Assembly: GCF_016432865.1 (NCBI RefSeq)
Contig: NC_067400.1
Span: 612,870,001 to 612,934,000, forward strand
Direction: 5' to 3'
DNA from: Antechinus flavipes
Lineage: Eukaryota
DNA: 64,000 nt
Part shown: piece after piece, positions 23,126 through 64,000 of the stretch
Layout: each line of letters opens with the position of its first letter
How positions within the stretch are numbered: position 1 is the stretch's first letter
Notes under the pieces: generated by a model
Seen by the model: the letters and a program-made list of their open reading frames with translations, nothing else
What the model was told of the DNA's origin: nothing
The model's database searches: none
Program-made: the position numbers and the translations under genes

Positions 23126-24789
23126 ACAAAGCCCTTGATTTGGAGTCAGGGAATCCAGACTGGAACCCCAGCACTATTTATGCTTCTGTGTCTGTCTCTG
23201 CACCTGTGAGAGCCCATCCGAAAATTAAACCAATAACAGGACAAGAAGCTTTAGAGGCAGCGTCGGGGAGAGCCGCTCGCAGCCCTTTAAAGACTCCCTC
23301 CCCTCTCAAATTGGATGATCTTCCTTCTCGCCTGCCTAGGGAATAGTGACAGTTGTAGGCCTGCGGGGCCTGCCAGCCTCCTCCCAGCCCCGCCCCCGTC
23401 TTCCCTCCCTCCCCACTCTCCACCTGCGCTGTCATCTGAGTGGCTGTCCCGTAGCCCAGAAGAAAGGCCCCGCCCCCTTGTTTAGTCCCGGGTTGGAGAA
23501 TCCCTTTATCGATGAAACGCAAATGGGTAAAAAGAAAATGACTCACAGGAGGATCAACAGCCAGCTAGGTCACAGGCTGTTGTCACCTGTTAGGTCATTG
23601 GAAAACCCCTGGGAGGGACTTCCCCGTCGCTAGCCCTTCAAGCTCCCTGCCCCCTTCTCTGAAAAGACCCCCGAAATTCAACATCACTCCTCCCTCCTTC
23701 AGTAACGCTGTCACCCCTACCTTGAGACCCTGGGAATCCTCTCTGGAAAATGAGCACAGTTGCTGGTGTCTGTGCTGGCAGGTGGCAGGCAAGGCCCTCA
23801 GAGAGGTCCAGCTGTAAGGTGGGATAGGCATGGGGGGAAAAAGAAGCGATAAAGTGCCTACTATGTGCCAGGCACTTTACTAAATATTTCACAAATAGCT
23901 CATTTGATCCTCACAAAACGCTGCATGATGGATGTTATTATCACCCCATGTTACAATCAAGGAAACTGAGGCACAGAGAGGTACGTTTTGGGGGGGAGGC
24001 AATCAGAGTTAAGTGACTTGCCCAGGGTCACACATCTAATAATTGTCAGAGACAGGATTTGAAGTAAGGTCTTCCTGATTCTAGGCCCATTGAAGATGAG
24101 AGGAAAGAGAAACACAGGAGTAGAGAGCCAAATACAAGGTGGATTGTTGGACTTGGGAGTTTAAGAGACTCCCTTTTAAATCTCCTTTAGAAGTCTTCTG
24201 GAAGGAAGAACGATCCTTGGCTTAAAAAAGAAAGCCCTCTCTGGAGGCAGTTAGGAGGGCCAGTGGCGAAAATGCTGATTCTCCGGCAGGAGGACCTGAC
24301 TTCAAATCGGGTCTGGGACACTTGCTAGCTGTGTGACCCTGGGCAAGTCATTTAACCCTATTGTCTTCTCCTAAAACCCACCTCTCTGTTCCTCAGTTTC
24401 CTTAACAATAAACTGAACCAGTCGGATTCCCTTCCAACTCTATAATCCTTTAATTAGAAAATCACAGCAATAGGACAGAGGACGGGTGGGGGTGGGGTAG
24501 AAGGGAAGAAAGGAACTGCAGGAGAAATAGAGGGGTGGGGGAGAAGAGGACATACACCCAGAGGGCTGGGAGAGAAAAAGTGAAGAGAGGCAGAAAGACA
24601 CAAAGAAACAGAGACTCAATAAGGGAAACCCAAAGAGACAGAAACGGGGTAGAGGAGATGGAGAGGTGAGAGGGGGAGGGGGTCTGACGTAATCCTGGTT
24701 TTGGGTGAGGAAAGCACGGCACGTGCCCGTTTGAAAAGCCAGGGAAGGTCTTGGCAGGCCTGGCCCTCGCTCCTGAGGTCCTCGAGCGC

Positions 24790-41850: not shown

Positions 41851-42848
41851 CATTTGCAATGAATGCCAAAAATATTGAGAAATGTGGTTCAGGATTAAAG
41901 AATGACATAGTCCAAAAACTTATAGATTGCAAAGAAGTCTTATACTCAATGAATACTGTCTTAGAGGAAAGACCTGGAAGACACTGGTCATGGGAAGCAG
42001 CAAACAATATTTTTTTCCTCAACAAATTTTAAAGGGTTTTAATAGATCATTTTCAAAGTGAAGAATGCAAGCTATAAATGATCTATGAAAAAGTCCATAA
42101 TAAATTATTGTTATTGTTCAGGAATTTCACTAATGTACCCATTTCCGTGACCTCATTTGGTTTTTTTTTTTGTGTGTGTGTGATTTGACATTTCCTTCTC
42201 TAAATCATTTTACAAAAATGAGGAAACTGAAGCAAAGTGAAAGCAAACTCAAAGTTTCTGAGTCTTGATTTGAACTCAGGGCTTCCTGATGACTAATAAT
42301 TAGAAAAAATGCCAATTACAACTCTGAGGATAATCTCACAGTTTTCAGATTGATCTTCTTAAAGTTTTTTTTTAGGGAAAGTGATAATTAGGAAAAGATA
42401 ATTATAAATGTTAGAGGGAATGTGGGAAAACTGGAATACTAATACATTGTTGGTGGCATTGTGAACTGATACAGCCATTTTGAAAAGCAATGTGGAACTA
42501 TGCCCAAAGGGCTATCAAATTGTGCATACCCTTTGATCCAGCAGTCTCTTTACTAGGTCTATATTCCAAAGAAATCATAAAAGAGGGGAAAGGACCCAAA
42601 TGCAAAGATGTCTGTAGCAGCTTTTTTAATATAGTGGCAAGGAGATGCCCATCACTTGGGGAATGGCTGAATAAGTTATGGTATTGTATGTTAGGGAATA
42701 TTATTATTCTTTTTTTCTTTTCCTGAGGCAGTTGGGGTTAAGTGACTTGCCCAGGATCACATAGCTACGAAGTGTTAAATGTCTGAGGCCAAATATGAAC
42801 TCAGGTCTTCCTGACTTCAGGGCTGGTACTCTCTTCACTGCACCACCT

Positions 42849-44555
42849 CACTTGCAGAACAAAGACCCCTATGGTATTTACACACTAATTTGGTTCTTCC
42901 TCTTCCCCAATCAAAGCAATTGAAGATGGAGCATAAATTAAGGGGCGGGGGAGGGAGGGGCAGAAAACAGGGTAATGAGCGAAATGATTATTAAATAACA
43001 AGTTATGGCAGAGATTTCTGACTTTACCCAAAATTTGGGCTACCTATCCTGTCTTGGTGGAGTTGTTTCCCCATGCAAAACTTTTTTCCCCATAGAAAAA
43101 CTTTTCAAAGAGATTCTAGTCCCAAGAAATCCAATCTTCTGTGTTTTAATCTGCCAAAACTGAAAGGCAGACCCCCATTTGTCAAGATTGTCCTAGGCAG
43201 GGATAGTTTGAATAAGAGTAATGATCCCCCCCCCCCAAAAAAAATGGAGGAGCTGGGAATTGAGGCCAATTGGGGAAAGGAGGGAGCTTAGGATCAGAAG
43301 TCTCTATCCCTGGGCAGTCAAAAGGGAAGCTGACCATCCATGTAGAGTGAAGCCCCAGTCCCCACCCCGCTGCCATGGCCAAGAAACTGATGGGGGCAGA
43401 GGGACCTGAGGGAGAGTGAAAACAGACACCAGTTTAAAAAAGAAAAAAAAAATCCAACCTGAAACCTGACCATGGGAAACAGTTTTCTAGTCTCATAGAG
43501 ACATTGGTTAGCAACCTGCATAGCCCCCCAGGGTGTTCCCCCATTCCCTCATTAGAATAAGCCCACCTCTCATTATAACATTCATTCATCTCATTGTTAA
43601 CCTATCAGCTATTGCCATCCTTAAGAACAACTACCCTTCCAAGTACATATGAGCATTGACTGGGTTCCATGAAGAGTCGTTGGCACCCAGAAATGCCACT
43701 GACCCGAATGTCAAAGAACACTTTTAAATAATTAGCTGCTATATGTAAGTATGTGTATGGATGAATATATATGTCTATAGATAAATAAATCTGTGCATAA
43801 CAGTAGCCTACTTGGGAGAGATGGGGAAGAATGAAAGGGAGAAAAAAGAATAATGTAAAAAATGCACAGCAGAAAATAAAAGTATAACCTATAGGGAAGC
43901 AAAGATGAATACTCATGAAAATAATATTTTCTAGTATCATATATGTTTTCTCAAAGTGGAAATTCATTATTGTATATTTTGAATCTCTCTGATGTTCTGC
44001 TGGACACATAATTTTTTTTTTTGTTTTTTACTTTCTTTTTCTGTCCTTTTTCTATTCTGTTCTTTCTTATATTGTATTCAGGTCAATAAAAAAAGATCTG
44101 CTAGCAATAATCAAATTATTAATTACCCAGAAACTATATCTCTTGAACTTTTTATGTCATAGTAAGAAAGTAATAAGACATCAACAGAGTCAAAGTGTCT
44201 GTATCCTTTTATCTCTTTAGGAAGTGTGAAGTTTCTTTGATTAAATTGGACGCCATCAAGCAGTCTGCTTCTAAACAAATGGGCAAGTAAGCCAAAACAA
44301 AATGTGACCAAAAGAAAATCTATTCTGTCCAGCTTCTGAATTTAGATTAGAGGATTATAAAATATTAAAAACATTAAAATATGAAATCGTTGGTCTTCAC
44401 AGTGCTCAAAGTCCTCCAACCCTTCATCTGGATTTTAAGTTTATTAGTTGAAACAACCTCTTTTCTCTCAATTCATAAGACTATAGCCACATAGCAAGAA
44501 ATGTAGGAAAAAGAATTCAGTGTGCTTGCTTGGAATATTTTAACCCTAAATCTAT
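42849..44555 (+). repeat. Third, gene-less copy of the IFNL 3'-flank duplicon
   Basis: 42849-43230 matches 52464-52840 and 60999-61380; 43538-43760 matches 61395-61615; 43865-44270 matches 53045-54550 (less an L1 insert); 44280-44555 matches 63673-64000. Confidence 0.85.
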
Positions 44556-46635
44556 CCCCAAATTTTCTTTTCCTTGCCTTATTGCCAATTTTAAAATTAC
44601 AGCTTTTTATTGACAAAACAAATGCGTGGGTAATTTTTCAACTCTGACTCTTGCAAAAACTTCTGTTCCAACTGTTCCTTTCCTTCTTTCCACTCCTCTC
44701 CTAGATGGCAGATAGTCCCATATATGTTAAATATATTAAAGTATATGTTAAATACAATATATGTATTCATATTTATATAGATGTCTTGCTACACAAGAAA
44801 AATCAGATTTAGAAAGAGGGTAAAAATAACCTGGGAAGAAAAATAAAAATGCAAGCAAACAACAACAGAAAAAATATAAATGCTATGTTGTGGTCCACAT
44901 TCCTTTCCCAGTGTTCTTTAGCTGAGTGTAGCTGGTTCTGTTCATTACTGATCAATTGGAACTGATTTGGCTCATCTCATTGTTGAAGATGGCCACTTCC
45001 ATCACAATTGATCCTCTTATAGTATTGTTGTTGAAGTGTATAATGATCTCCTGGTTCTGCTCACATCACTTAGTATCAGTTCATATAAGTCTCTCCAAGA
45101 CTCTCGGGAATCATCCTGCTGGTTATTTCTTATAGAACAATAATATTCCATAACATTCATATACCACAATTCACCCAGCTGTTCTCCAAATGATGGGCAT
45201 CCATTAAATTTCCAGTTCTAGCCACTACAAAAAGGGCTGCTACAAACATTTTTGCACATACAGATCCCTTTCCCTCCTTTCAGATCTCTTTGGGATATAA
45301 GGCCAGTAGTAACACTGCTGGATCAAAGGGTATGTGTTATGAGCTAGAACTCTGTACTTGAAACCAGGATTCCTACAAGGTGCTAACTCAGTGGAATTGA
45401 TAAGAGAATGGTTATCTTGTTTAGCATGGTGTTTAATAGTTCTCTAGTTCAGTATGATTGATTTAATCTTACCACAAATAATGGTTCTCTAGTGATATAA
45501 TGATTGTTTTATATTCAGTATATTGTAAATGACCTAATTATACTAGAGTATATAAGCTGGGATAAACTTAGCCAGAGGCAGACTCGGAAAAGACAGAGGA
45601 CTGGAGGCTGGAGCTCAGGCTCTCCCAGAGAGATTCACTCCATCTCACACCACCAGGTGGCTGGCCTCCTGCATTTCCTCCACTGAGACCAAGCTAGTGT
45701 TGGCCCCAGGCAAGGACGTGATAAAGAATTTGGACTTCAACACCTGGCTATTCTTGTGGTGATTAATCTGCTGAAATGGAGGCTGCTCCAAGACCTCCAG
45801 AAAACCAACCAGAACATTACAGGTATGCACAGTTTAACAACTTTTTGAGCATAGTTCCAAATTGCTCTCCAGAATGGTTGGATCCATTCACAATTCCACC
45901 AACAATGCATCAGTGTCCCAGTTTCCCCATATCCTCTCCAATATTCATCACTATCTTTTCCTGTCATGTTAGCCAATCTGAGAGGTATATAGTGGTATCT
46001 TAGAGTTTTCTTAATATGCATTTCTCTGATCAATAATAATTTGGAACATCTTTTCATATGGGTAGAAATAGTTTCAATTTCATCATCTGAAAATTGTTCA
46101 TATCCTTTGATTTCTCAATTTGATTTCTCAATTGGAGAATGGCTTGATTTCTTATAAATTTGAGTCAATTCTCTATATGTTTTGGAAATGAGACCTTTAT
46201 CAGAACCTTTAACTGTAAAGATGTTTTCCCAATTTATTGCTTCGCTTCTAATCTTGTCTGCATTAGTTCTATTTGTATAAAAACTTTTTAACTTGATATA
46301 ATCAAAATTTTCTGTTTTATGATCAATAATGATCTCTAGTTCTTCTTTGGTCACAAATTCCTTCCTCCTCCACAGGTCTGAGAAGTAAACTATCCTATGT
46401 TCTAATTTATTTGTAATCTCATTCTTTATGCCTAGATCATGAACCCATTTTGATCTTATCTTGGTGTATGGTGTTAAATATAGGTCACTGTCTAGTTTCT
46501 GCCATACTGATTTTTAATTTTTCCAGAAGTTTTTGTCAAATAGTACATTCTTATCCCAAAAGTTGGGGGTTTTGGGTTTGTCAAACACTAGAGTGCTATA
46601 GTTATTGACTATTTTGTCCTGTGAACCTAACCTAT
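44555..46635 (-). mobile_element. L1 3' portion interrupted by a solo LTR
   Basis: L1 3'UTR/ORF2 sequence continuous across the LTR insertion (GATCAAAGGGTATG|...|GGTATGCACAGTTT). Confidence 0.85.
45335..45821 (+). mobile_element. Solo LTR, 487 bp, 6-bp TSD (class II/ERV2-like)
   Basis: Starts TG, ends CA; TSD GGTATG at 45329-45334 and 45822-45827; TATATAAG ~45550; CTCF-like CCACCAGGTGGC 45650-45661. Confidence 0.9.
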
Positions 46636-47648: not shown

Positions 47649-48700
47649 TGTTAAAGACCATGCCTAAGTGTGAAGGGGTAAGTCAATTTTCCAAAAGCTC
47701 CCACTATGAATCACAACACCCCTGAAGGAATTGCAAATCAGCTTTTATTGACATAAATGTTAATTGTGGATTGGGAATGAAATAAATTGGAGGCAAGGGA
47801 GAAGAGGAGAGAGGTTAGAGAATGCACCTGCCTCTCAGTCTCCTGGTATTGTTATCATGCTCTCACATGAAAGGATCTATTCTGCTGGGCAGAAGTAGAT
47901 CCCCAGCAACCACTAACAAGAAGCTCTTGTACAAAATGGCACCCAGTGTGGGGAACAAGAAGCAGCAGCAGTAGCAGTAGTGTTCTAGAGCTGCTAGATA
48001 GTCACATTGTGAATCATAACACACCTGAAATAATTCAAAACAGCCTTTACCGATGCAGATGTTCCTTCTGAGAGGATGATAATGATACAAGGCTGATTTG
48101 CAACTCCTTCAGGGCTGTTATGATTTAGAGCTTCGGGGGCTTTCAGAAAAACGACTGGCCCCTTCACACTTAGGCATGGTCCTCAACAATTCCTCATTTT
48201 TTTTGTTTTATGGGAATACAATTATTTTTCCCACAACAGCATGGTCAATAAGTATGTACAGTAGCTGTTATCTGAGTCTGCATGTTCCCATGCTAAGGAG
48301 AAAACAGGATTGTCAAAGTCTTTTCTATCCTATTCCTCTGGATGTTTGCAGGATGAGACACTATAGCAGGTATTGAATCTTGTGAGATGTTATGGAGGCA
48401 AGATCTCTGACAAGTGGAGAAGTAGGATTTTAGTCAGTAGGCATTTTTCATAAGTTTCTCATCAATCTCCTGGCTAGACATCTTTGATGTGTTGGCCCAT
48501 TTTAATTATGCCAATTGAAAAAGTCTTACCAGGTCTCTTCTCCCTTTCCTTCCCCACAGGTTAAAGCAGGAAGTCTCCTGGGAGGATCCTACTCCTGAAC
48601 AACTCTCAAGCACTGCTACTGCTGCTGCTGCTGTTGCTGCTTCTTTGTTTACTTTGTTACTTTCCAGGTGGTGAAAAGCTCTTTCATACACTTGTGGAAA
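47649..48700. mobile_element. Nest of ERV fragments: two opposed LTR 3' ends, Lys-PBS-like site, minus-strand leader/gag-start remnant
   Basis: ~100-bp inverted arms 47649-47750 and 48085-48188 ending in CA; TGGCACCCAGTGTGGGGA 47937-47954 (14/18 to the tRNA-Lys1,2 PBS); minus-strand CCTG|GTAAGA donor and ATGGGCCAA (MGQ) at 48500. Confidence 0.6.
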
Positions 48701-50046: not shown

Positions 50047-50177
50047 TTTCAGTTTCCCTTTCCTGGTACCCGCTCTTTTTCATGCAGACACCTGCCTCGC
50101 CCCTTCCGCTGAGGGATTTTTGGAATCTGTTTCCATTTTTTACGCATCTGTGGAATCTCCGGCTGGGCCGCTTAAAA
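50047..50177 (+). promoter_or_regulatory. IFNL copy A promoter: triple IRF/ISRE, broken kB site, TATA-like box
   Basis: TTTCAGTTTCCCTTTCC 50047-50063 (contains the AGTTTCNNTTTCC ISRE consensus); TGGAATCTCC 50151-50160; TTAAAA 50172-50177. Confidence 0.75.
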
Positions 50178-50231
50178 GTGCAGGGATGAAGCCGTCTCCT
50201 GAGACACTTGCCACCTCACTTCTCCAAGGCC

Positions 50232-51616
50232 ATGATGCTTCCTCAGGCTCTCCCGCTACTGCTTTCTGCCCTGATGTCAGGGACGATTTCGAAGTCCCTG
50301 GCCCCGACTCTCAGTAATCTTCCCCCCGAGAGGAGCTGCCAGATCAGCCACTTCAAGTTTCTTTCACCTCGGGAGATGGAAACTTTCAAGGTGGCCAAGG
50401 ATGCCTACGTAAGTTCCTGGCGGGCTTTTTGTACTCCTGCCCTCGCACTTCCCGGGGGTCTAACTTCGATCTCTTTTACTGTGCTCCAATACTCATCTCT
50501 TGCACTTAGGTCTAATCTTCATCCTTCCTTCTTGAGCTCTGTCCTTTTCTCTGTTTCTAACCTCCATCTTACATCGCAAGGACCTAGAAGGGTCACAAGC
50601 CTTTAATGTCTTCCTCTTCATCCCCTCAAGGAGAAGACCATGCTTCAGACGGAGAGGAAATGTAGCTCCAGATTCTTCCACAGAAGCTGGGACCTTCGGC
50701 AGCTGCAGGTAAGAAGGGGCGCTCCCCACCTGTCAGTCGCACATCACCTTTCTCCAAAATCTGTCGTATCCCCATTTCTTTTCCCCAATCTCCTCTCACC
50801 TGTCAGTCCCTCATCACCTTTCTCCAAAATCTGTCGCATCCCTATTTCTCTCCCCCTTCTGTCGGTGCTCCCCCGTCTCTTCCCCTGTCCCCTTCATCAG
50901 CCTCTCCCTCACAACGCCTCTCATCTCTCCCCTCACAGCTGTCAGTTCGGCCCGTGGTCTTACAGGCTGAGCTGAAATTGACTCTGGAGGTCTTGAAAGC
51001 CGTAACCAAGCCGGAGTTGGACAGCGTTCTGGCTCAGCCCCTACAAACGCTCAGCCACATCCACCAAGAGATCCAAAGCTGTGTGAGTACCGGAGGGTGG
51101 GCGGGGCTCCCCTGGACCAATGGGCATGGAGCTGTTCCCTGTCTCTCAGGTGCCTGGGTCCCTTGCAGTGAGGCTGAGGGGATGCAATACCTGGAATCTC
51201 CTCCTCCCCCTGCCACATCCATCAAATGCCTGGGTCCCCTTCCTTTTATTAAGTCCACCCTCTCCCTACACAGGTTACTTCCAGGCTCTCTAAAGAACAC
51301 AGGCCTCCAGGCCGCCTGAATAATTGGTTGAACAAGCTCAGTGAGGCTAGAAAGGTGAGTTAGAAAAGCTTCAGATCTACTGATGGCACCGGGGGATGGA
51401 AAGGAGGAGTCAGAGGGGACCCCAGAGTCTGGGCAGCAAGAGACTCTGTCTCCCTCTGAGGGAGGAACAAGGATTCAGGATTCCCCAGAGAACCCTTATC
51501 CCTGTGTCTCTTCTTTTTAGGAGGCTCACAATTGCCTAGAAGCATCCATTATGCTCAATCTCTTAGGAATCCTGACCAGAGACCTCCGATGTGTAGCCTC
51601 TGGGGACCTATGTTGA
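50232..51616 (+). CDS. Interferon lambda, IFNL3-like, copy A, 191 aa
   Basis: join(50232-50408,50631-50708,50939-51082,51274-51354,51521-51616), all phase 0 GT-AG. MMLPQALPLLLSALMSG...SCQISHFKFLSPREMETFKVAKDAY/EKTMLQTERKCSSRFFHRSWDLRQLQ/LSVRPVVLQAELKLTLEVL...HQEIQSC/VTSRLSKEHRPPGRLNNWLNKLSEARK/EAHNCLEASIMLNLLGILTRDLRCVASGDLC*. Six Cys, consistent with the three-disulfide IFN-lambda2/3 pattern. One-to-one orthology to human IFNL1/2/3 is not resolvable. Confidence 0.95.
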
Positions 51617-51659
51617 AGATTCAGACCCACCCTGAGATCTCAGAGTGGACTTTTGCACT

Positions 51660-51783
51660 CCAAACTTTATTTATGGACCAACACCCTTCTAATTTATTTA
51701 CTCCATGCCCAACACTCACATACTTTATATGCCAGAGGACAGTTTTATACTTTTGTATTTGTTTCTATATTTTGTTAAATAAA
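51660..51783 (+). terminator. Copy A 3'UTR AU-rich elements and poly(A) signal
   Basis: ATTTA motifs ~51668 and ATTTATTTA ~51692-51700; AATAAA 51778-51783 followed by a long GT-rich tract. Confidence 0.75.
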
Positions 51784-53239
51784 TAAGAAAACGCAAAAAT
51801 ATTGAAATCTTCTCTGTCATTTTGTAGTTGTTTTCTGTGTGACTGTGGCTATAAGCAAGTGTGGTTGTGTGTTTCTATGTGTAGTTGTGAGAAGGTGAGA
51901 TTGAGGATTTGTGAGCACAGTTGTGGGTTTGTGTGTGTAATTGTAGATCTGTGTTTAACTGTAAACAGGTAGGGTTGTGGATTTTGAATGCAATTATGGG
52001 TTTGTGTATATGGTCAGAGGGCTTTGTGTGGTTGTGAGCAGGTGGGATTGAGACTGTCTATGTGTGTGTGTAGTTGTAGGTTTGTGTATGGCTGTGAGCT
52101 GGTGGGATTATGGGTTTGTATGTGTGGGTATAAGTGGGACTGTAGGATGTGTGCATTGACCTGGATATCCGTGTGGCTGCAGTCTGGGTCTCCTTTGACC
52201 TCGCTTGTGGGCTCCACTTTGCTGGGAAGGTAGTACCTGGGCTGGAAAATTAGATTGCATTTAATAGGGACTCTAGTCAATCAATCCTGCCTGACTCTGA
52301 GTGAGCCCCTTGGACATAGGTGATAGGGACCAGGAATCAGTGTACCCTCTTAGCGGAGCCAGCTGGATGCTGGGCTTGGGAGACCATTAGACATAAAGAG
52401 ATTTCTTGATTCAGCGTCCTCCCTTGAGAAAGAAGACAGTCCATGGAATTTGTGCATCTTGCCTCACTTGAAGAACAAAGACCCTATGGCATTTACACAC
52501 AAATTTGCTTTTTCCTCTTCCTCAATCAGAGCAATTGAAGATGGAGCATAAAATAAGGGGGGATGGGGCAGAAAACAGAGTAATGATCGAAATGATGATT
52601 AAATAACAAATTATTGCAGAGATTTCTGACCTTACCCAAAATTTGGGCTACCTATCCTGTCTAGGGGGAGCTGTTTGCCCATTCAAGTAGGAAAACCTTT
52701 CCAAGAGATTCTAGTCCCAAGAAATGAAGTCTTCTGTGTTTTAGCCTGCCAAGACTGAGGAGAGGCAGGCAGAACCCTTTTGTCAAGACTGCCCTAGGTA
52801 GGGATAGTTTGGATAACAGTAAAATCCCTTTGTCTAAGACTGAGTTATCCAATCAAGTTCCCCCATTCTCTTATTAGAATAAGCCCACCTCTCATATAAT
52901 ATTCATTCTCATTAACCTATCAGAGTTATTGCCATCCTTAAGAACAACTACTCTTCCAAGTATATGTATGAGCATTTAATTATGCCAATTGAAAAAGTCT
53001 TACCAGGTCTCTTCTCCCTTTCTTTCCCCACAGGAAGTAGAGGGAGAATAAAAGTGTAACCTATATGGAAGCAAAGATAAACTCTCATGAATATATTTTC
53101 TATTGTTATATATGTTTCTCGAAATGAAAATTTATTATATTTTGAATCTCTCAGATGTTCTGCTGGGCACATGATAATGTTTTTCCTTTTTACTTTCCTT
53201 TTTTCTCCTTTTCCTTTTTTTATGTTAAAATACATAATA

Positions 53240-54340
53240 AATCCTATATATATATATATATACATACACATATTTATACAGTTATCTTGTTGCACAAGTA
53301 AAATTAGATCAAGAAGGAGGAAAAAGAAAAACTGAGCAAGAAAACAAAATGCAAGCTAATAACAACAGAGAGAGTGAAAATGCTATGTTGTGGTCCACAC
53401 TTTGTTCCCACAATCCTCTCTCTAGTGTAGATGGATCTCTATAACACTGAACAAGCAGAACTGATTTGAATCATCTCATTGTTGAAGAGAGCCATGTCCA
53501 TCAGAATTGATCATCATATAGTCTTCTTGTTGCCATGTATAATGACCTCCTGGTTCTGCTCTTTTCACTCAGCATCAGTTCCTGTAAGTTTCTCCAGACC
53601 TCTCTGAAATCATCCTGCTGATCGTTTCTTATAGAACAATAGTATTCCATAAAATTCATATACCACAGTTTATTCAGCCATTCTCCAATTGATGGGCATT
53701 CACTCAATTTCCAGTTTCCTGCCACTATAAAGAGGGCTGCCACAAACATTTTTCCACATGTGGGTCCTTTTCCCTCTTTTAAGATCTTTTTTTTTTTAAG
53801 CATATAAGCCCAGTAATAACATTGCTTGATAAAAGGATATGCACAGTTTGATAACTTTTTGACCAGAGTTCCTAATTGCTCTCCAGAATGGTTGGATTTG
53901 TTCACAGTTCCAACAACACTGTATTAGTGTCCCAGTTTTCCCAGAGCCCCTCCAACATTCTTCATTATCTTTTCCTGTCATCTTGGCCAATCTAAGAGGT
54001 GTGTAGAGTTATCTCAGTGTTCTCTTAATTTGCTTTTCTCTAATCAATAGTGATTTGGAGCATCTTTTCCTGTGACTGCAAATAGTTTCAATTTCTTCAT
54101 CTGAGAATTGTCTATTCATATCCTTTGGCCATTTATCACTTGAACAACGGCTTGAACTATCATAAATTTGACTCAATTCTCTCTATATTTTAGAAATGAG
54201 GCCTTTGTCATATCCTTTGGATATAAAAATGTTTTCCCAGTTTATTGCTTCCCTTCTAATCTTGTCTGCATTCTTTTTAACATAATATAGTAAAAATTAT
54301 TTATTTTGTGATCAATGATGATCTCTAATTCTTTGGTCTT
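53240..54340 (-). mobile_element. L1 3' fragment inserted in the copy-A flank
   Basis: Minus-strand peptide MFVAALFIVAGNWKLSECPSIGEWLNKLWY; absent from the colinear copy at 43865-44270. Confidence 0.85.
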
Positions 54341-54681
54341 CTATCCTCTTTCTATTTTGTTTTTTTCTTATTTTGTACTCAGGGCAATAAAAAAGATCTG
54401 CTAGCAATAATCAAATTATTAATTACCCAGACGCTAAGTCTCTTGAACTTTTTATGTCATAATAAGAAGGTAATAAGACATCAACAGAGTAAAAGTGGTT
54501 GTATCCCTTTATCTCTTTCGGAAATATGAAAGGTCTCTGATTGAATTGGAAGGGGATCCAGGCATTGGGTACTTGAAAATTGGTCATGATTTTGGTGTCT
54601 CTGAGAAGACAAGCCTGCTGCATTGGATGAGAGATAAGCAGTTCTAGGAAAAGATTTGATTCCCAGTTTTGTGAATCATAG

Positions 54682-54694
54682 CACTTTCACTTCT
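54682..54694 (-). promoter_or_regulatory. PRDI-like IRF/PRDM1 element
   Basis: Minus strand reads AGAAGTGAAAGTG, matching the IFN-beta PRDI core as recalled. Confidence 0.45.
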
Positions 54695-55139
54695 ACCAGA
54701 GGAAAGGACAGGGCCATAGTGGAGGTGATGATTAATTTTTTTCCCTCCCCCCACCATCAAGCCATGATGTTTTGCAGAGGCACTATTAATACAGGAGGGT
54801 GTGCCGTAACCAATTCAAAATCTGGGTTAGCCCACAACTTCCTGGATTTCTTCTGGACTCAGTCTGTCTTCCACCATGAAATGGCCTTTTTCACTCTGTA
54901 AATGTCTCACAGTTAGTCAATAAGCATTTATTAAATGCCTACTACATTTCAGGCATTAAACCCTAGAAATTAAAAAGTAAAAGGTAAGGAACAATCATCT
55001 CTGATGGATGAATTCATCCCTGAATCTGTTTTTCAGGAAACACCAGTGCCAACAAGCTGATTTTATTTATTTGTTTTTAATAGTATTTTATTTTTTCCAA
55101 ATACATGCAAAGGTAGTTTTTAAAAATTAAAACATTTTA

Positions 55140-56600
55140 TTTTCCCCAAAGGGATCTTAAAGGAGGGAAAGGACCCACAGGTACCAAAATGTGTGTAGCA
55201 GCCCTTTTAGTAGTAGCAAAAAACTGGAGACTGAATGGATGCAATCAGTTGCAGAATGGCTGAATAAGTTATGGGATATGAGTGTTATGGAATATTATTG
55301 TTCTTTAAGAAATGCCCAGCAGGATGATTTCAAAGAGATCTGGAGAGACGTATGATGCTGAGTGAGGTGAGTAGAATTAGGAGATCATTTTATAGGACAA
55401 AAATGAGATTTTACAATGATCAATTCTGATGGACGTGGCTCTCTTCATCAACGAGATGACTCAGACCAGTTCCAATGATCTTGTGATGAAGAGAACCATC
55501 TGCGCTCTGAGAGAAGACTGTGTAGGAACTGAGTGTGGAACACAACATAGTATTTTGACTCTTTTTGTAACTGTTTGCTTGCATTTTATTTTCTTTCTTA
55601 ATTTTGTTCCTTTTTGATTTGATTTTTCTTGTGTGTGCAGCAAAGTAATTGTATAAGTATGTGTGCATATATTGGATTTAACGTATATCTTACCATGTTT
55701 AACATATATTAGATTACTTGCTATCTGGAGGAGGGGATGGAGGGAGAAGGGGAAAAATTGAAACACAAGATGTTTCAAGGGTTAATGTTGAAAAATAATC
55801 CATGCATATATTTTGAAATTTAAAAAGCTTTAATAAAAAACTTTTTATTTTCAAAATATATGCACATCTTTTCAACAATGAAGTAATTTGGGCCAGTTCC
55901 CATGATCTTGTGATAAAGAGAGCCATTTGTACTCAGAAAGAGGACTGTGGGAATTGAGTGTGGATCATAACATAGTGTTTTCCCTCTTTTTGTTGTCATT
56001 TGCTTGCATTTTGTTTTCTTTCTCATTCTTTTCCTTTTTGATCTGGTTTTTCTTGTGCAGTATGATCATTGTGGAAATAAGTAAAGAAAAATTAGACATG
56101 TTTAACATATATTGGATTGCTTGCTATCTAGGGGAAGGGGTAAGGAAAAGAAAGGGAAAAATATCTGAACATGAGTTTTTGCAAGGGTAAATGTTGAAAA
56201 TCATCTATGCATATGTTTTGGAAATAAAAAGCTTTAATAACAAAAGAAAATAATTAAAAGCATACATGCATAATTAGTTTTAATATTCACCCTTATAAAA
56301 TGCAAAGATAGCTTTCAACATTCACCTCTGTAAAATGTTGTCCAAATTTTACTTCTTGTCTTCCTCTCTACCCCCACCCCAAGAGAGTAAGCAATCTGAT
56401 ACAGGTTAAACATGAGCAATTCTTCTAAACGTATTTCCATATTTGTCATGCTATGCAAGAAAAAACAGATAACAAGGTAAAAAAAACTTGAGAAAAAATA
56501 AGCAAACAAACAATAACAATAATAAAAAGATGAAAATACTATGCTTCCTTCCATATTCAGTCTCCATAGTTCTCTCTCTGGATGCACATGACATTTTCCA
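55140..56600. mobile_element. Cluster of L1 3' fragments in both orientations
   Basis: Repeated L1 3'UTR motifs (GAGAGAAGACTGT...CAACATAGT...TTGCTTGCATTTT). Confidence 0.7.
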
Positions 56601-56859
56601 TCGCAAGTCTATCGGAACTGCCTGGATGCAAATCCCCAGTTCTTTCCAGATCTCTTAGTTGGAATACCTCCTGCCCACATTTTAATATACCTGGAGGAAA
56701 GAAGGAAAACTGTCAGTGGAAAACAAAGCAAGGGGAAGGGAGGAATGTATAGTAAGTCTAGAAAGGGAAGTAAACACTAGGTTAGGAAAGCCTTCAAACA
56801 AAGGATTTTTAAAAATTATAACTTTTTATTGACAGTACAAATGCATGGGTAATTTTTTA

Positions 56860-57488
56860 AAAAATTTTTATTTAATGATTACTTTATATTGACAACATTA
56901 TCCCTTGCACTCGTTTCTTTTCCGATTTTTTTTCCCTCCCTCCCTCCACCCCCTCCCCTAGATGGCAAGCAGTCCTTTATATGTTGGATATGTTGCAGTA
57001 TATCCTAGATACAATATATGTTTGCAGAACTGAACAGTTCTCTTGTTGCGCAGGGAAAATTGGTTTCAGAAGGTATAAATAACCCGGGAAGAAAAACAAA
57101 AATGCAGATAGTTCACATTCGTTTCCCAGTGTTGGTTCTTTGGGTGTAGCTGCTTTTGTCCGTCATTTATCAATTGAAACTTAGTTAGGTCTCTTTGTCA
57201 AAGAAATCCACTTCCATCAAAATATGTCCTCATACAATATCGTTGTCGAAGTGTATAATGATCTCCTGGTTCTGCTCATTTCACTTAGCATCAGTTCATG
57301 TAAGTCTCGCCAGTCCTCTCTGTATTCATCCTGCTGGTCATTTCTTACAGAACAATAATATTCCATAACATTCATATACCACAATTTGCCCAGCCATTCT
57401 CCAATTGATGGGCATCCATTCATTTTCCAGTTTCTAGCCACTACAAATAGGGCTGCTACAAACATTTTGGCACATACAGGTCCCTTTC
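56860..57488 (-). mobile_element. Young truncated L1 with 17-bp TSD
   Basis: GCATGGGTAATTTTTTA at 56843-56859 and 57489-57505; ORF2-tail peptide MRKGPVCAKMFVAALFVVARNWKMNGCPSIGEWLGKLWY. Confidence 0.9.
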
Positions 57489-57924
57489 GCATGGGTAATT
57501 TTTTACAACATTATCCCTTGCACTCACTTCAAGGTCCTCAAAGGTCCTCCTTTGATCCTGGAGGTAACAGGAAACCTCAGGTTCATTGTCCTCGTGCATA
57601 TTTTTTCCTTGATTCTCTTGTTTTAATCTGCCTCCATTCACTTAAATTGTCCCATGCTTTTCTATACTTATTATATTCATTGTTCTTATATAGCACTTAT
57701 AGTCCATTACATTCATGTACCACGTTATATTTAGCCATTCCATGATCAATGGAGAGGGACAATTGATAGAATACTTTGTTTGGAATCAGGAAGACTCATC
57801 ATAAATTCATTTTAAATAGCTACTGGATTTGTGACATCGAGCAACTCATTTACCTTGTTTGCCTTTGTTCATCTATAAAATGATCTGGAAAAGGAAATGA
57901 CAAACCGAGATCTTCACCAAGAAA

Positions 57925-58704
57925 AAAGCCCAAAATAGCATCAGAGAGAGTCAGAATGAAACAATTCAACAACAGTCAATGGACATTTATTTTGTTTCCA
58001 GTTTTTTCTACTTAAAAAAAAAGTTAAAAGTACCTAGATGGTACAGTGGTTAAAGTATGGGTCTTGGAGTCAGGACTTGAGTTCAAATGTGACCAGACAC
58101 TTAAGACTTCCTACCTGTGTGAACCTGGGCAAGTCACTTAACTCTAACTTCATGCAAAAAAAAATGTAATATTTTGGTGTATATAGATCCTTATTTCATA
58201 TCAATGAGCTTTCTGGGGTATAGGTCTAGCAATAGAATCTGGGTCAAAGAGCATGGACTAAAAGCTAAAAATCTTCTTCATTTGCATAAGACATAATTGC
58301 TTATTTAAATGCTTGTATTAATTCACAACTCCACCAACAATGCATTTATGTACTATACAGTACTTGTCCAAAAACTGACTTTTTCCAGTTTTTGTCATCG
58401 TTGACAATTCCCTGGTGAGGAGGTAAAACTTCAGAGATGTGTTGATTTGCCTTCCACTTATTAGTGATTTGAGGCATTTTCTTATGTGATTGTATTCGTT
58501 TGTAATTTTTCTTTTGAGAACTGGTCACAGTTCTAACAACTTTTGACCGCGAAATTGGGAATTGGGAATTGTCTATTAAAGTTAAGTTCACTAGAGGGGC
58601 CTTTGGTGAGCACAATCCATAGGCAGTTTTGTGAATCTGATGTAGTAGCCACTTCCTTCTCCACTCCCCAACCTTTATCCCCAGCCAGAGATTCATCCCG
58701 GTAC
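57925..58704 (+). repeat. Direct repeat X1 (~0.8 kb) upstream of IFNL copy B
   Basis: Colinear with 61624-62438 (SINE + old L1 + unique tail ending CCCCAGCCAGAGATTCATCC); offset ~3.7 kb. Confidence 0.92.
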
Positions 58705-58781
58705 CCGCCCTTTCAAGGTAAGAACCTTGCAGACACACCTGGCCCCGTCCGAGCCTTTCGCAGCGAGATTTTACGAATCTC

Positions 58782-58829
58782 TTTCCATTTTTCATACATC
58801 AGGGGAATCTCCGGCTTGGCCGCTTAAAA
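58782..58829 (+). promoter_or_regulatory. IFNL copy B promoter: IRF-like site, perfect kB site, TATA-like box
   Basis: TTTCCATTTTTC 58782-58793; GGGAATCTCC 58803-58812 fits GGGRNWYYCC; TTAAAA 58824-58829. Confidence 0.75.
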
Positions 58830-58883
58830 GTGCGGGGATGAAGCGGTCTCCTGAGACACTTGCAGCCTCATCTCTCCAAGGCC

Positions 58884-60214
58884 ATGATGCTTCGGCAGGC
58901 TCTCCCCTTGCTGCTTTCTGCCCTGATGTCAGGGGCGATGTCGAAGTCCCTGGCCCCGACTCCCAACAGCCTTCCCCCCGAGAGGAGCTGCCAGATGAGC
59001 CAGTTCAAGTCTCTTTCGCCTCGGGAGCTGGAAGCCTTCAAGGTGGCCCAGAATGCCTACGTAAGTTCCTGGAGGGCTTTTTGTACTCCACTCCTGCCAC
59101 CTCCCACTTCCCGGGAAAGGGGTGGGGGACGGGGGTGGGGTCTAACCTCGATCTCTTTTACTGTGCTCCAATACTCATCTCTGGCACTTAGGTCTAACGT
59201 TGATCCTTCCTTCTTGAGCTCTGTCCCTTTCTGTGTTTCTAACCTCCGTCCTACATCGCAAGGACCTAGAAGGGTCACAAGCCTTTAACGTCTTCCTCTT
59301 CATCCCCTCAAGGAGAAGACCATGCTTCAAACGGAGAGGAAATGTAGCTCCAGATTCTTCCACAGAAACTGGGACCTTCGGCAGCTGCCGGTAAGAAGGG
59401 GCGCTCCCCACCTGTCAGTCCCATATCACCTTTCTCCAAAATCTGTCGCATCTCCATTTCGCCCTTCTGTCGGTCCTCCCCCCGTCTCTTCCCCTGTCCC
59501 CTTCATCAGCCTCTCCCTCACAACGCCTCTCATCTCTCCCCTCACAGCTGTCAGTTCGGCCAGTGCTCTTAGAGGCTGAGCTGAAATTGACTCTGGAGGT
59601 CTTGAAAGCCGTAACCAAGCCGGAGTTGGACAGCGTTCTGGCTCAGCCCCTACAAACGCTCAGCCACATCCACCAAGAGATCCAAAGCTGTGTGAGTACC
59701 GGAGGGTGGGCGGGGCTTCCCTGGACCAATGGGTATGGAGCTGTTCCCTGTCTCTCAGGTGCCTGGTTCCTTTGCAGTGAGGCTGAGAGACTGCAATACC
59801 TGGATCTCTCCTCCCCCCACCCATCAAACGCCTGGGTTCCCTGCGCTTTTATCAAGTCCACTCTCTCCCTACACAGGTGACTTCCCAGCCCTCTAAAGAA
59901 CACAGGCTTCCAGGACGCCTGAAGAATTGGCTGAACAAATTCAGTGAGGCCAGAAAGGTAAGTTAGAAAAGCTTCAGATCTGCAACTAGCACCTGGGGAT
60001 CCAAGGGAGGAGTCAGAGGGGACCCCAGAGTCTGGGCAGCAAGAGACTCTGTCTCCCTCTGAGGGACTCAGGATTCCCCGGAGGACACTTACCCCTGTGT
60101 CTATTCTCTTCTCTTCAGGAGCCTCACAATTGCCTCGAAGCATCCATCATGCTCAATCTCTTCCGACTCTTGCTCCAAGACCTCCGATGTGTAGCCTATG
60201 GGGACCTATGTTGA
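58884..60214 (+). CDS. Interferon lambda, IFNL3-like, copy B, 191 aa
   Basis: join(58884-59060,59313-59390,59548-59691,59877-59957,60119-60214), all phase 0 GT-AG. ...SCQMSQFKSLSPRELEAFKVAQNAY/EKTMLQTERKCSSRFFHRNWDLRQLP/LSVRPVLLEAELKLTLEVL...QSC/VTSQPSKEHRLPGRLKNWLNKFSEARK/EPHNCLEASIMLNLFRLLLQDLRCVAYGDLC*. Confidence 0.95.
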
Positions 60215-61623
60215 AGTTCCAGACCCAGCTTGAGGTCTGAGACTGAACTTTTGCACTCCAAATATTATTTATGGAACAACACCCTTCTAATTTATTCATT
60301 CCCTCCACCCCTAACACTCACATACTTTATATGCCAGAGGATAGTTTTGTACTTTTGTATTTTTTCTATATTTTGTTAAATAAATAAGAAAACACACAAA
60401 AAATATTGAAAGCTCGTCTGTCGTTTTGTAGTTGTTTTCTGTGTGACTGTTTGTGGCTTTAAGCAAGTGTGGTTGTGGGTTTTTGTGTGTGGCTCTGAGC
60501 AGGTGAGTTTGTGGATTTGTAGGTTTGTGTGTGCAATTGTAGATCTGTATGTGGCTGTGAACAGGTAGGGTTATGAATGTGTGAATGCAATTGTGGGTTT
60601 GTGTATATAGTCAGAGGGCTGTGTATGGCTGTGAGCTGGTGGGATTGTGGGTTTGTATGTGTGGGTATAAGTGGGACTGTAGGATGTGTGCGTTGACCTG
60701 GATCTCCGTGTGGCTGCAGTCCGGGTCTCCTTTGACCTCGCTTGTGGGCTCCACTTTGCTGGGAAGGTAGTACCTGGGCTGGAAAATTAGATTGCATTTA
60801 ATAGGGACTCTAGTCGACCAATCCTGCCTGACTCTGAGTGAGCCCCTTGGACATAGGTGATAGGGACCAGGAATCAGTGTACCCTCTTAGCGGAGCCAGC
60901 TGGATGCTGGGCTTGGGAGACCATCAGACATAAAGAGATTTCTTGATTCAGCGTCCTCCCTTGAGAAAGAAGACAGTCCATGGAATTTGTGCATCTTGCC
61001 TCACTTGAAGAACAAAGACCCTATGGCATTTACACACAAATTTGCTTCTTCCTCTTCCTCAATCAGAGCAACTGAAGATGGAACATAAAATAAAGGGGGA
61101 TGGGGCAGAAAACAGAGTAATGATCGAAATGATGATTAAATAACAAATTATTGCAGAGATTTCTGACCTTACCCAAAATTTGGGCTACCTATCCTGTCTA
61201 GGGGGAGCTGTTTGCCCATTCAAGTAGGAAAACCTTTCCAAGAGATTCTAGTCCCAAGAAATGAAGTCTTCTGTGTTTTAGCCTGCTGAGACTGAGGAGA
61301 GGCAGAACCCTTTTGTCAAGACTGCCCTAGGTAGGGGTAGTTTGGATAAGAGTAAAGTCTCTTTGTCTAAGACTGAGTGATCCAATCAAATTCCCCCATT
61401 CCCTCATTAAGAGAAGCCCACCTCTCATTATAATATTCATTCTTCTCATGAATTTTTAAGCTATCGGTTAGTGCCATCCTTAGGAACAACTCTGATTCCC
61501 AAGTGTATATAAGCATTGACTGGCTTCCATGAGGAGTCTTTGGCACCCAGAAATGCCACTGATCCAAATGTCAAAGACCACTTTTAAATAATTAGGCTGC
61601 TATATGTATGTATGTGTGAAAAA

Positions 61624-62438
61624 AGAATCCAAAATAGGGGTCACAGAGAGTCAGGCAGGAATGAAACAATTCAACAAGAGTCAATGGACATTTCTTTTGT
61701 TTCCAGTTTTTTCTACTAGAAAAAAATATATGTTAAAATTAGCTAGATGGTACAGTGGTTAAAGTATGGGCCTTGAAGTCAGGAGGATCTGAGTTCAAAT
61801 GTGATCAGACACTTAAGACTTCCTAGCTATGTGAACCTGGGCAAGTCACTTAACCCTTACTTCCTCATGCAAAAAAAAAGGTGTAATATTATATATAGAT
61901 ATATAGATTCTTATTTCATATCAATGAGCTCTCTGGGGTATATGTCTAGCAATAGAATCTGGGTCAAAGAGCATGGACTAAAAGCTAAAAATCTTCTTCA
62001 TTTGCATAAGACATAATTGCTTTTTTAAATGATTGTACTAATTCACAACTCCACCAACAATGCATTTATGTACTATCCAGTACTTGTCCAAAAACTGACT
62101 TTTTCCAGTTTTTGTCATCTTTGACAATTCTCTGGGGAGGAAGTAAAACCTCAGAGTTGTTTTGATTTGCCTTCCACTTATCAGTGATTTGAGGTATTTT
62201 CTTATGTGATTGTATTCGTTTGTAATTTTTCTTCTGAGAACTGCTCACTATTCTAACAACTTTTGACCATGTTTCTGTTGGGAACTGTCTATTAAAGTTA
62301 CGTTCACTGGAGGGACCTTTGTTGAAGCATAATCCATAGGCAGGTCTGTGAATCTGATGTAGTAGTCACTTCCTTCTGCACCCCGCCCCCCCACCCCACC
62401 CCCTACCTTTATCCCCAGCCAGAGATTCATCCTGATAC
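61624..62438 (+). repeat. Direct repeat X2 (~0.8 kb) downstream of IFNL copy B
   Basis: Second copy of 57925-58704; not followed by IFNL sequence. Confidence 0.92.
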
Positions 62439-64000
62439 CTGCAATACCAAATTAGGAAGACTCAACTAAAGAAGTGTAGGTCTCAGAGAAAGGAGATTAC
62501 TGTGGAATTTTTGTTTTCTGGGAAGGGTATCTACGCAACAGGGTAGTAGCACAAGTCTTGAGGAGATTGGGGGGCCCTGAAAACAACATCAAATACAGTT
62601 CTTTTTCATTGAGAAGTAATGGATTTTTCTCTTTCTGTTTTGGTTTATTCACTTTTACATCTTTAGCATCTTAGGTGTGTTTTCTACATGATTAAATACA
62701 AGTTTCCTCATCCCTAAAGTTCATACTATACATTAAATATCTGTATGAGTTGGGGGCTCTCTTACCTACATTTAGAGAAACTGAGTCATGCGCTATGGTT
62801 TATTTTGGAGTTTTTCCTGCATTAATTGCAGGTGTGTTTGGGGGGAAGATGAAAGAAAAGAAACTGACTTCTTTGGATTCCTTCAGATTAGGAATATTTC
62901 CTGTGAGTTTATAATTTTCATGGGGCAGTGAGGAAGAGGTTCCCAAGTTGTGAATACACATGAAGAGTAAATTATTTAAGATGAGGGAAAAAATATGCTG
63001 AACAATCAAAGCAGTGTTGCCCATTTGAAAGAGTTATTGACATCCCCAAATAGAAAATGGATGGGCGAACAGATATTGACCCAGATAATAAAAGTTTCTA
63101 GAGAAGTTTAGCCTGTGTAAATCAAAGGACTCTATAAGCCACTTGAGTCAGCAAATGTCTGATCTATTTGCCAAGTGGAGAGATGTGGTAGCTAAGGGCA
63201 GTACCAATTTTACAATATAAAACGGTAAGTTGGTAAGGAAGAATTTGAGCAGTATCAACTCAGGAAACAGCGAGAAGCAGAGAAATTTGGAGAAAGCTTG
63301 GCAGGATCTTGGCAACTAAAAACATTCATCATGAGGACATTTAAAGATGAAAGTGGAAATAACAAAAGATTAAAGTCCAGAAAGAGAAGTAAATATTTTC
63401 ATGTAACACCTGTGGACAGTGTGTGACACTTGGTGAGTACTCCATGTGTCAACTGGTCCACAGCAGCTGTGTAAGAAGTCTATGTCATCGATTTTCGTGT
63501 CATCATCTTGAAACCCACAGGAAATCAGTATTCCTTGATTCAGTGGGGGGCTGGGGGGGGGAGGGAGAGGACAGCATATTTGAACTGTCCCCCAGATGGT
63601 GCTATAGATTCAAGTCACCAACCAAGTGGTCTCATCAGGGTCTCTGGCACCAAACCTCCCTCACCCCACCAAGCAGTCTGGCTCTAAACAAATGCGCAAG
63701 TAAGCCAAAACAAAACTTGATCAAAAGAAAATCTATTCTGACCAGGTTCTGAATGCAGATTAGAGGGTTATGAAATATTAAAAACATTAAAATGTGAAAT
63801 CATTGGTCTCCACAGAACTCAAAGTCCCCCAACGCTTCATCTGGTCTTTATCCGTTGAAACAACCTCTTTTCTCTCAATTCATAAGGCTATAGCCACATA
63901 AGAAAAAATGTAGGAAAAAGGGTTCAGTGTGCTTGCTTGGAGTATTTTTAATCCCAAACTTATCACCAAACTTCCTTTTCCTTGCCTTATTGCCATTTTT

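What the first reader, a model, noticed from the sequence alone, without database searches (positions are those of the whole stretch)
57925..62438. IFNL copy B sits in a 3.7-kb cassette bracketed by ~0.8-kb direct repeats
Seen: X1 (57925-58704) and X2 (61624-62438) are colinear and highly similar. X1 runs straight into the IFNL promoter, while X2 ends at the same motif (GATTCATCC..TACC) and passes into unrelated sequence. Inference: non-allelic recombination between X1 and X2 would precisely delete or tandemly amplify one complete IFN-lambda gene, an accordion-type copy-number module in an antiviral locus.
Basis: partly seen in the sequence, partly recalled or inferred. Interest (0 to 1): 0.7.

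Follow-up and report, generated by a model that had tools for sequence, protein, structure and literature searches.

The report
Old tandem duplication of interferon-lambda gene
The two 0.8-kb repeats around the second interferon-lambda gene are real, but they are simply the tail ends of one ancient head-to-tail duplication of a "gene plus downstream DNA" block, not a special copy-number device.

Summary
X1 (57921-58708) and X2 (61618-62442) are colinear direct repeats, 86.6% identical with gaps and 90.4% over aligned bases. They flank an intact five-exon, 191-codon IFN-lambda gene (copy B).

The "cassette/accordion" reading is mostly not supported. The end of X1 and the start of the A/B gene homology meet at one 9-bp motif, GGTACCCGC (58700-58708). 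That is the join expected when a unit [gene … X] duplicates head to tail, giving A–link–X1 | B–X2.

- Background divergence is the same for the genes (K2P 0.141±0.011) and for X (0.128±0.016).
- X2 starts inside a SINE that is whole at X1.
- Copy B lacks downstream segments that copy A and an older relic, Z (42846-44592), still carry. So the second unit lost, or skipped, about 4.9 kb.
- X is largely old SINE and L1 debris.

As recombination substrates X1/X2 are poor: the longest perfect match is 79 bp. The gene bodies are better, with perfect matches up to 192 bp. Patches of 96-99% identity in both A/B and X suggest later gene conversion.

Verdict: an ordinary, old segmental duplication.

The parts
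42846..44592 (+). Relic Z: a third, gene-less copy of the IFNL downstream flank. It comprises the tail 42846-43756, segment d1 43872-44250 and segment d2 44250-44592. It serves here as an outgroup for the order of segments.
   Evidence: 42846-43221 matches A 52462-52822 and B 60999-61355 (82%). 43536-43756 matches B 61391-61617 (86%). 43872-44250 matches A 53044-53218 and 54331-54550. 44250-44592 matches 63663-64000 (86%). No IFNL exon lies nearby.
50065..52976 (+). Copy A of the duplicated unit: proximal promoter, an intact five-exon IFNL gene (exons 50232-50408, 50631-50708, 50939-51082, 51274-51354, 51521-51616) and the 3' flank.
   Evidence: Homology to B starts at GGTACCCGC, 50065-50073.
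52977..57920 (+). Link between copy A and X1 (4.9 kb). It holds a 60-bp patch, d1a 53044-53218, an L1 piece 53221-54333, d1b 54331-54550, further L1 pieces (55136-56250, 56432-56612, 56889-57488) and the 5' part of an old SINE (about 57770-57920). Copy B has none of this.
   Evidence: multi-copy matches cover about 3.0 of 4.9 kb, and d1 is shared with Z. One search identifies the SINE.
57921..58708 (+). X1: the distal end of duplication unit 1. It is made of a SINE tail (57921 to about 57978), a second SINE (about 58034-58164), an L1-like piece (about 58276-58476) and about 230 bp of unclassified sequence.
58700..58708 (+). Duplication junction: GGTACCCGC is shared by the end of X (X2 has GATACCTGC at 62434-62442) and the start of the gene unit (A has GGTACCCGC at 50065-50073).
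58700..61617 (+). Copy B: proximal promoter, an intact five-exon IFNL gene (58884-60214) and a 3' flank whose homology to Z runs to 61617.
61617..61618 (+). Second breakpoint: the gene tail is joined directly to the middle of the SINE that begins X. Segment d1 and the rest of the link are missing.
61618..62442 (+). X2: the distal end of duplication unit 2.
62443..64000 (+). Original downstream flank of the unit: 62443-63662 has no match in the window, then d2 (63663-64000) is shared with Z.

Best explanation
One ancestral block read: proximal promoter – IFNL gene – 3' tail – d1 – TE-rich spacer – SINE – X – 1.2 kb – d2. A segment running from about 185 bp upstream of the ATG to the end of X was duplicated head to tail. 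The join formed at a 9-bp microhomology (GGTACCCGC), giving A–link–X1 | B–link–X2–1.2 kb–d2.

The second unit then lost its link, or the copying polymerase skipped it in the same event. That joined the gene tail (61617) to the middle of the SINE that precedes X (61618).

X1 and X2 are therefore passenger DNA, largely SINE and L1 debris, at the far end of the unit. X1 'runs into the promoter' of B only because that point is the duplication junction.

Since then the two units have diverged by about 13-14%. Patches have been re-homogenised by gene conversion: two in A/B and one in X. Both genes have been kept intact.

Shown: the repeat, the junction, the equal divergence, the SINE truncation, the missing d1 in B, and the intact genes. 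Inferred: the mechanism (microhomology-mediated replicative or end-joining duplication), whether there was one event or two, and gene conversion as the cause of the mosaic.
For: 1. Coincident boundaries. X1/X2 homology ends at 58708 and A/B homology begins at 58700, overlapping in GGTACCCGC. A has 9 of 9 of these bases and X2 has 7 of 9.
2. The outer flanks are unique. Sequence upstream of A (before 50065) and downstream of X2 (62443-63662) has no counterpart in the other unit.
3. The age is the same. Background K2P is 0.141±0.011 for A/B (0.142±0.013 for non-coding sites only) and 0.128±0.016 for X1/X2 outside its high-identity patch.
4. X2 begins about 58 bp from the 3' end of a SINE that is complete at X1. 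An independent copy of that SINE family at 42090-42340(-) aligns straight across the point.
5. Relic Z shows the ancestral order tail–d1–d2. A keeps d1 between its tail and X1, B keeps d2 after X2, and B lacks d1.
6. No IFNL relic follows X2.
7. The identity is a mosaic. A/B has tracts of K 0.041 (50461-51130) and 0.023 (52041-52830). X has a tract of 0.035 (58198-58400). Max-run permutation gives p = 0.008 for X and p < 0.0002 for A/B.
8. Both genes are open, with dN/dS 0.45-0.47.
Against: - No second genome or reads could be examined, so the order of events rests on one assembly.
- After about 14% divergence, the original extent of the junction microhomology cannot be known.
- The model needs an extra deletion or a second template switch in unit 2.
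- How much of the 4.9-kb link existed at the time of duplication is unknown.
- The 100 bp before X2 (61518-61617) is oddly close to Z (93%). Copy A has replaced the matching stretch with a 60-bp patch copied from 48501-48560. So the region has seen additional small rearrangements that the simple model does not explain.
Confidence: 0.75

Rival explanations
1. One reading: X1 and X2 act as a recombination bracket. Unequal crossing-over between them recurrently deletes or amplifies copy B, so IFNL copy number varies among individuals.
For: The repeats are direct, only 3.7 kb apart, and enclose exactly one complete gene. A 200-bp patch of 96.6% identity inside X (p = 0.008) suggests that X1 and X2 have exchanged sequence since the duplication.
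Against: - The longest perfect X1/X2 match is 79 bp, and identity outside the patch is about 88%. NAHR norms are 300-500 bp of uninterrupted identity and >95% over >=10 kb (PMC4195946).
- A/B gene bodies have better tracts, with perfect runs of 192 and 145 bp, so X is not the favoured substrate.
- The two-copy state with both genes intact has lasted for K about 0.14.
- X is TE debris with no sign of a dedicated function.
Confidence: 0.1
2. The unit is [X + gene], with X as upstream flank. A tandem duplication of 57921-61617 made X1-B-X2-B', and B' was later deleted. Copy A arose separately.
For: The tail|X2 join at 61617/61618 is also a point where two homology blocks abut. The 3697-bp spacing equals X plus gene plus tail.
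Against: - It needs the deletion that removed B' to end within a few bases of the independent 5' limit of A/B homology. That is an unexplained coincidence.
- There is no trace of B' after X2 at DNA or protein level.
- It needs more events than the best model.
- It does not explain why A carries d1 followed by X1.
Confidence: 0.08
3. X2 is a later, separate copy of X1 (a small duplicative insertion or templated repair patch), unrelated to the A/B duplication.
For: The overall X1/X2 K2P (0.103) is slightly lower than the A/B background (0.141). The neighbourhood does contain a small templated patch, 52975-53034 ~ 48501-48560 at 98%.
Against: Outside its conversion-like patch, X diverges by 0.128±0.016, which is indistinguishable from A/B. 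The 3' end of the copied segment would have to coincide with the older duplication junction by chance.
Confidence: 0.05
4. Assembly artefact: X2, or the whole B unit, is a falsely duplicated or mis-joined haplotype.
For: None positive.
Against: - X1/X2 and A/B differ by about 10-14% with many indels. That is far more than haplotypes or collapsed repeats would differ.
- The window has no N.
- Six public runs under three organism labels, from two studies, hold 54-77% of the 31-mers of 57400-63300.
- If the window is from the published A. flavipes reference, that assembly is 100x PacBio (PMC9290055).
Confidence: 0.02

Closest known systems
Lineage-specific tandem/segmental duplications of IFNL genes in mammals (e.g. 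human IFNL2/IFNL3), Fox et al. 2009, PMC2654155
   Same: An IFN-lambda gene was duplicated together with its non-coding flanks. Paralogues within a genome are closer to each other than to orthologues. Gene conversion has been invoked there. Copy number varies between species (opossum 2, platypus 3, shrew 9 in their table).
   Different: Here the copies are head to tail and 8.6 kb apart in a dasyurid marsupial. The breakpoints are resolved to a 9-bp junction, and the second unit is internally shortened. The human IFNL2/IFNL3 pair is, from my own knowledge, in opposite orientation. That was not checked here.
Microhomology-mediated (FoSTeS/MMBIR or MMEJ) tandem duplications, as catalogued at PLP1 (PMC6902434)
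   Same: A single head-to-tail join-point carries a short shared motif. The 9 bp seen here falls at the top of the 2-9 bp range quoted for microhomology. A second breakpoint inside the copy is compatible with a complex event involving two template switches.
   Different: This event is ancient and fixed in the assembly. The junction has since accumulated substitutions, so the original microhomology length is uncertain.
NAHR-prone low-copy-repeat pairs (genomic-disorder type LCRs; HERV- or Alu-mediated CNV), PMC4195946
   Same: Directly oriented repeats flank a gene, and there is evidence of patchy re-homogenisation.
   Different: X1/X2 are 0.8 kb, about 88-90% identical, with at most 79 bp of perfect identity. 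They are well below typical LCR or MEPS values. In size and identity they resemble the weakest, Alu-like class of substrates.

Membership tests
Head-to-tail (tandem) segmental duplication | Two colinear copies in the same orientation on the same strand | tested here: met
   50102-52976 ~ 58754-61517 and 57921-58708 ~ 61618-62442, all plus/plus.
Head-to-tail (tandem) segmental duplication | A single join where the end of the unit abuts the start of the unit, with unique sequence outside both outer ends | tested here: met
   the end of X1 (58708) overlaps the start of B (58700); upstream of A and 62443-63662 are unique.
Head-to-tail (tandem) segmental duplication | All parts of the unit show the same age | tested here: met
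   K2P 0.141±0.011 (A/B background) against 0.128±0.016 (X outside the patch).
Head-to-tail (tandem) segmental duplication | Units colinear over their whole length | tested here: not met
   Unit 1 is 8.64 kb and unit 2 is 3.74 kb. Unit 2 lacks d1 and the link. This requires a later deletion or a second template switch.
Microhomology-mediated duplication junction | A short identity (2-9 bp) present in both substrates and reduced to one copy at the join | tested here: inconclusive
   GGTACCCGC at the join matches A at 9 of 9 bases and X2 at 7 of 9. Divergence since the event blurs the original state.
NAHR-prone LCR pair / accordion CNV module | Directly oriented paralogous repeats flanking the variable segment | tested here: met
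NAHR-prone LCR pair / accordion CNV module | High identity with long uninterrupted blocks (MEPS about 300-500 bp; typically >95% over >=10 kb; PMC4195946) | tested here: not met
   the longest perfect block is 79 bp; 90.4% identity overall and 88.3% outside the patch, over 0.8 kb.
NAHR-prone LCR pair / accordion CNV module | Observed deletion or duplication alleles among individuals or species | not testable with these tools
The available runs are kept as contigs only.
Interferon-lambda gene (Pfam IL28A, PF15177) | Five coding exons with GT/AG borders, an open frame, and a match to the family profile over its length | tested here: met
The exons match profile positions 1-27, 28-52, 56-101, 103-128 and 131-156 of 157, with E-values from 1e-7 to 6e-15 (0.017 for exon 4).
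LTR-type or composite mobile cassette | Terminal repeats that are element ends, with target-site duplication and an intron-less or element-encoded interior | tested here: not met
   X starts inside a SINE and consists of SINE and L1 pieces. The interior is an intron-bearing host gene. The sequences flanking X1 on the left and X2 on the right are not alike.

The most novel reading that the evidence does not exclude
The two units still exchange sequence. The 96-99% patches in A/B and in X are recent conversion tracts. On this reading, occasional unequal crossovers, through X or more likely through the gene bodies, make IFN-lambda copy number (1, 2 or 3) polymorphic within or between antechinus species, possibly with chimeric A/B genes.
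Probability: 0.1. Interest if true: 0.45.

Novelty: new member of a known kind. Interest (0 to 1): 0.17.

Why it matters
The finding mainly corrects a reading: the "bracket" is a by-product of how the gene pair arose.

It is useful for annotating the marsupial IFNL locus in four ways.

1. It fixes the duplication breakpoints.
2. It shows that copy B inherited only about 185 bp of sequence upstream of its ATG from the ancestral promoter. Everything further upstream is TE-derived X1. This bears on any claim that the two paralogues are regulated differently.
3. It shows patchy gene conversion, which will mislead gene trees.
4. It predicts that the A–X1–B–X2 layout is shared by other dasyurids.

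It opens no new mechanism.

Tried and rejected
- **Simple model [quoted passage not shown].** Rejected, because the A link contains d1, which is shared with relic Z and is absent from B. B must have lost or skipped sequence.
- **X as the upstream part of the unit, with a decayed third gene after X2.** No DNA or exon-level relic was found.
- **X as LTRs or a mobile cassette.** Rejected on its SINE/L1 composition and its intron-bearing interior.
- **Known RNA families in 58149-64000.** None found.
- **Earlier notes of this scan.** Searching by words gave nothing on the duplication.
- **Joined spliced protein.** Only single exons were searched, by reference.
Full report
**Observation**

The window holds two direct repeats. 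X1 is 57921-58708 and X2 is 61618-62442.

- Ungapped seeds recover eight colinear blocks with spacings of 3705-3734 bp.
- Gapped self-BLAST joins them into one alignment of 829 columns at 86.6% identity.
- A global alignment gives 90.4% identity over 784 aligned bases, with 9 gap openings.

A match of this length cannot arise by chance (BLAST E = 0).

Between the repeats lies an intact interferon-lambda gene, copy B.

- Its five phase-0 exons all have GT/AG borders and encode 191 codons.
- Searched one exon at a time by reference, they match Pfam IL28A (PF15177) at profile positions 1-27, 28-52, 56-101, 103-128 and 131-156 of 157.

**Wider architecture**

Copy B is the second of two IFNL genes. 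Copy A (50065-52976) is colinear with 58700-61517, and A is also intact.

A third, gene-less relic of the downstream flank, Z, lies at 42846-44592.

- Z's tail matches the tails of A and B.
- Z's next segment, d1 (43872-44250), is present after A's tail, split there by an L1 piece (53044-53218 and 54331-54550).
- Z's last segment, d2 (44250-44592), matches 63663-64000, which is downstream of X2.
- No IFNL exon relic exists after X2 or before Z. The only other IFNL-like coding in the window is an IFNL4-like gene near 25-27 kb.

**The junction**

Reading the sequence directly and aligning it pairwise gives three facts.

- X1/X2 homology runs up to …GATTCATCCyGrTACCyGC, ending at 58708 in X1 and 62442 in X2.
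- A/B homology starts at GGTACCCGC, at 50065-50073 in A and 58700-58708 in B.
- So the end of X1 and the start of B overlap in a single 9-bp motif.

This is what a head-to-tail duplication of a unit [gene … X] produces: end of unit, short microhomology, start of unit. Upstream of A and downstream of X2 the sequence is unique, as expected for the outer flanks. Microhomology of 2-9 bp at such joins is the usual signature of replicative or end-joining duplication (PMC6902434).

If X were an independent bracket, its 3' limit would have no reason to coincide with the 5' limit of the gene duplication.

**Same age**

With the high-identity patches excluded, K2P is 0.141±0.011 for A/B and 0.142±0.013 for its non-coding sites only. 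It is 0.128±0.016 for X1/X2. The two are indistinguishable.

**The second breakpoint**

The homology of B's tail to Z runs to 61617, and X2 starts at 61618.

- X2's first ~58 bp are the 3' end of an old SINE.
- At X1 the same SINE continues upstream to about 57770.
- An independent member of that SINE family at 42090-42340(-) aligns straight across the point equivalent to 57921.

X2's left edge is therefore a rearrangement breakpoint. Unit 2 lacks d1 and the rest of the 4.9-kb link that separates A from X1.

Either unit 2 suffered a deletion later, or the original event involved two template switches. I cannot separate these. About 3.0 kb of the A link is L1-like multi-copy sequence. How much of that predates the duplication is unknown.

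**What X is**

X consists of four parts:

- a SINE tail;
- a second, tRNA-type SINE (about 58034-58164, which has several other copies in the window);
- an L1-like piece (about 58276-58476);
- about 230 bp of unclassified sequence.

Rfam finds no known RNA family in 58149-64000. X looks like passenger intergenic DNA.

**After the duplication**

Identity along both pairs is a mosaic.

| Pair | Background | High-identity tracts |
|---|---|---|
| A/B | about 86-88% identity | 50461-51130 (K 0.041); 52041-52830 (K 0.023) |
| X1/X2 | about 88% identity | 58198-58400 (K 0.035) |

- The clustering exceeds chance: max-run permutation gives p = 0.008 for X and p < 0.0002 for A/B.
- In the tail, A and B share 65 sites against Z, compared with 19 (Z with A) and 12 (Z with B).
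- I read these tracts as gene conversion. That is an inference.

Both genes are open, with dN/dS of 0.45-0.47, so both appear to be maintained.

**Rough age**

I did not verify this.
- With the rate used for that species (1.37e-9 per site per year, PMC9290055), K = 0.14 corresponds to about 50 My. Even at a rate two to three times faster it is 17-25 My.
- Either figure is older than the Antechinus–Murexia split of about 11 Ma (PMC9290055). The layout should therefore be shared among dasyurids.

**Could X1/X2 drive copy-number change?**

Formally yes. In practice they are weak substrates.

- They are 0.8 kb long, about 88-90% identical, and have a longest perfect block of 79 bp.
- NAHR is quoted as needing 300-500 bp of uninterrupted identity, and its usual substrates are >=10 kb at >95% identity (PMC4195946).
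- The gene bodies themselves carry perfect blocks of 192 and 145 bp inside 0.6-0.8-kb tracts of 96-98% identity. They would be the likelier sites of any unequal exchange.

**What could not be done**

- Six public runs under three organism labels, from two studies, hold 54-77% of the sampled 31-mers of 57400-63300.
- Copy-number polymorphism, cross-species conservation and assembly continuity are therefore untested.
- Mis-assembly is nevertheless unlikely. The copies differ by 10-14% with many indels, and the window has no N.

**Comparison with what is known, and verdict**

Lineage-specific duplication of IFNL genes together with their flanks, and possible gene conversion among them, is established for mammals (PMC2654155). 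This is a new, well-resolved example in a marsupial, not a new kind of element.

The accordion interpretation is an over-reading of an ordinary, old tandem duplication.

Noticed in passing
window 52975-53034 and 48501-48560: A 60-bp patch, 98% identical between the two places, sits exactly where A/B homology ends. It replaces about 214 bp that Z keeps and about 100 bp that B keeps. The copy at 48.5 kb ends in a splice-acceptor-like ...CCCCACAG|G followed by a CTG-rich stretch. It may be a small templated insertion.
   Followed up: partly
window 42846-44592: Relic Z is a third copy of the IFNL downstream flank (tail, d1, d2) with no gene in front of it. A SINE and L1 pieces lie directly upstream. 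This implies an older duplication whose gene was lost.
   Followed up: partly
window 50461-51130 / 59140-59790 and 52041-52830 / 60570-61365: Two tracts of 96-99% identity between copies A and B sit in a background of about 87%. The first covers exons 2-3. These are likely gene conversion and will distort paralogue trees and per-exon divergence comparisons.
   Followed up: partly
window 58700-58884 vs 50065-50232: Copy B shares only about 185 bp upstream of its ATG with copy A. Further upstream, B has TE-derived X1 while A has purine-rich low-complexity sequence and an L1 piece. Any distal promoter elements cannot be shared by descent.
   Followed up: no
window 61518-61617 vs 43658-43756: The 100 bp just before X2 is 93% identical to relic Z. 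That is closer than the rest of the Z/B tail (about 76-86%). The sample is small, and the cause could be conversion or chance.
   Followed up: no
window 60420-60700 and 51985-52132: Degenerate TG-rich repeats of about 60-74 bp occur in the 3' flank of both IFNL copies.
   Followed up: no
window 22537-23222: A tandem array of 49-bp units, about 14 copies at 80-95% identity, lies in the GC-rich first half of the window.
   Followed up: no
   Followed up: no
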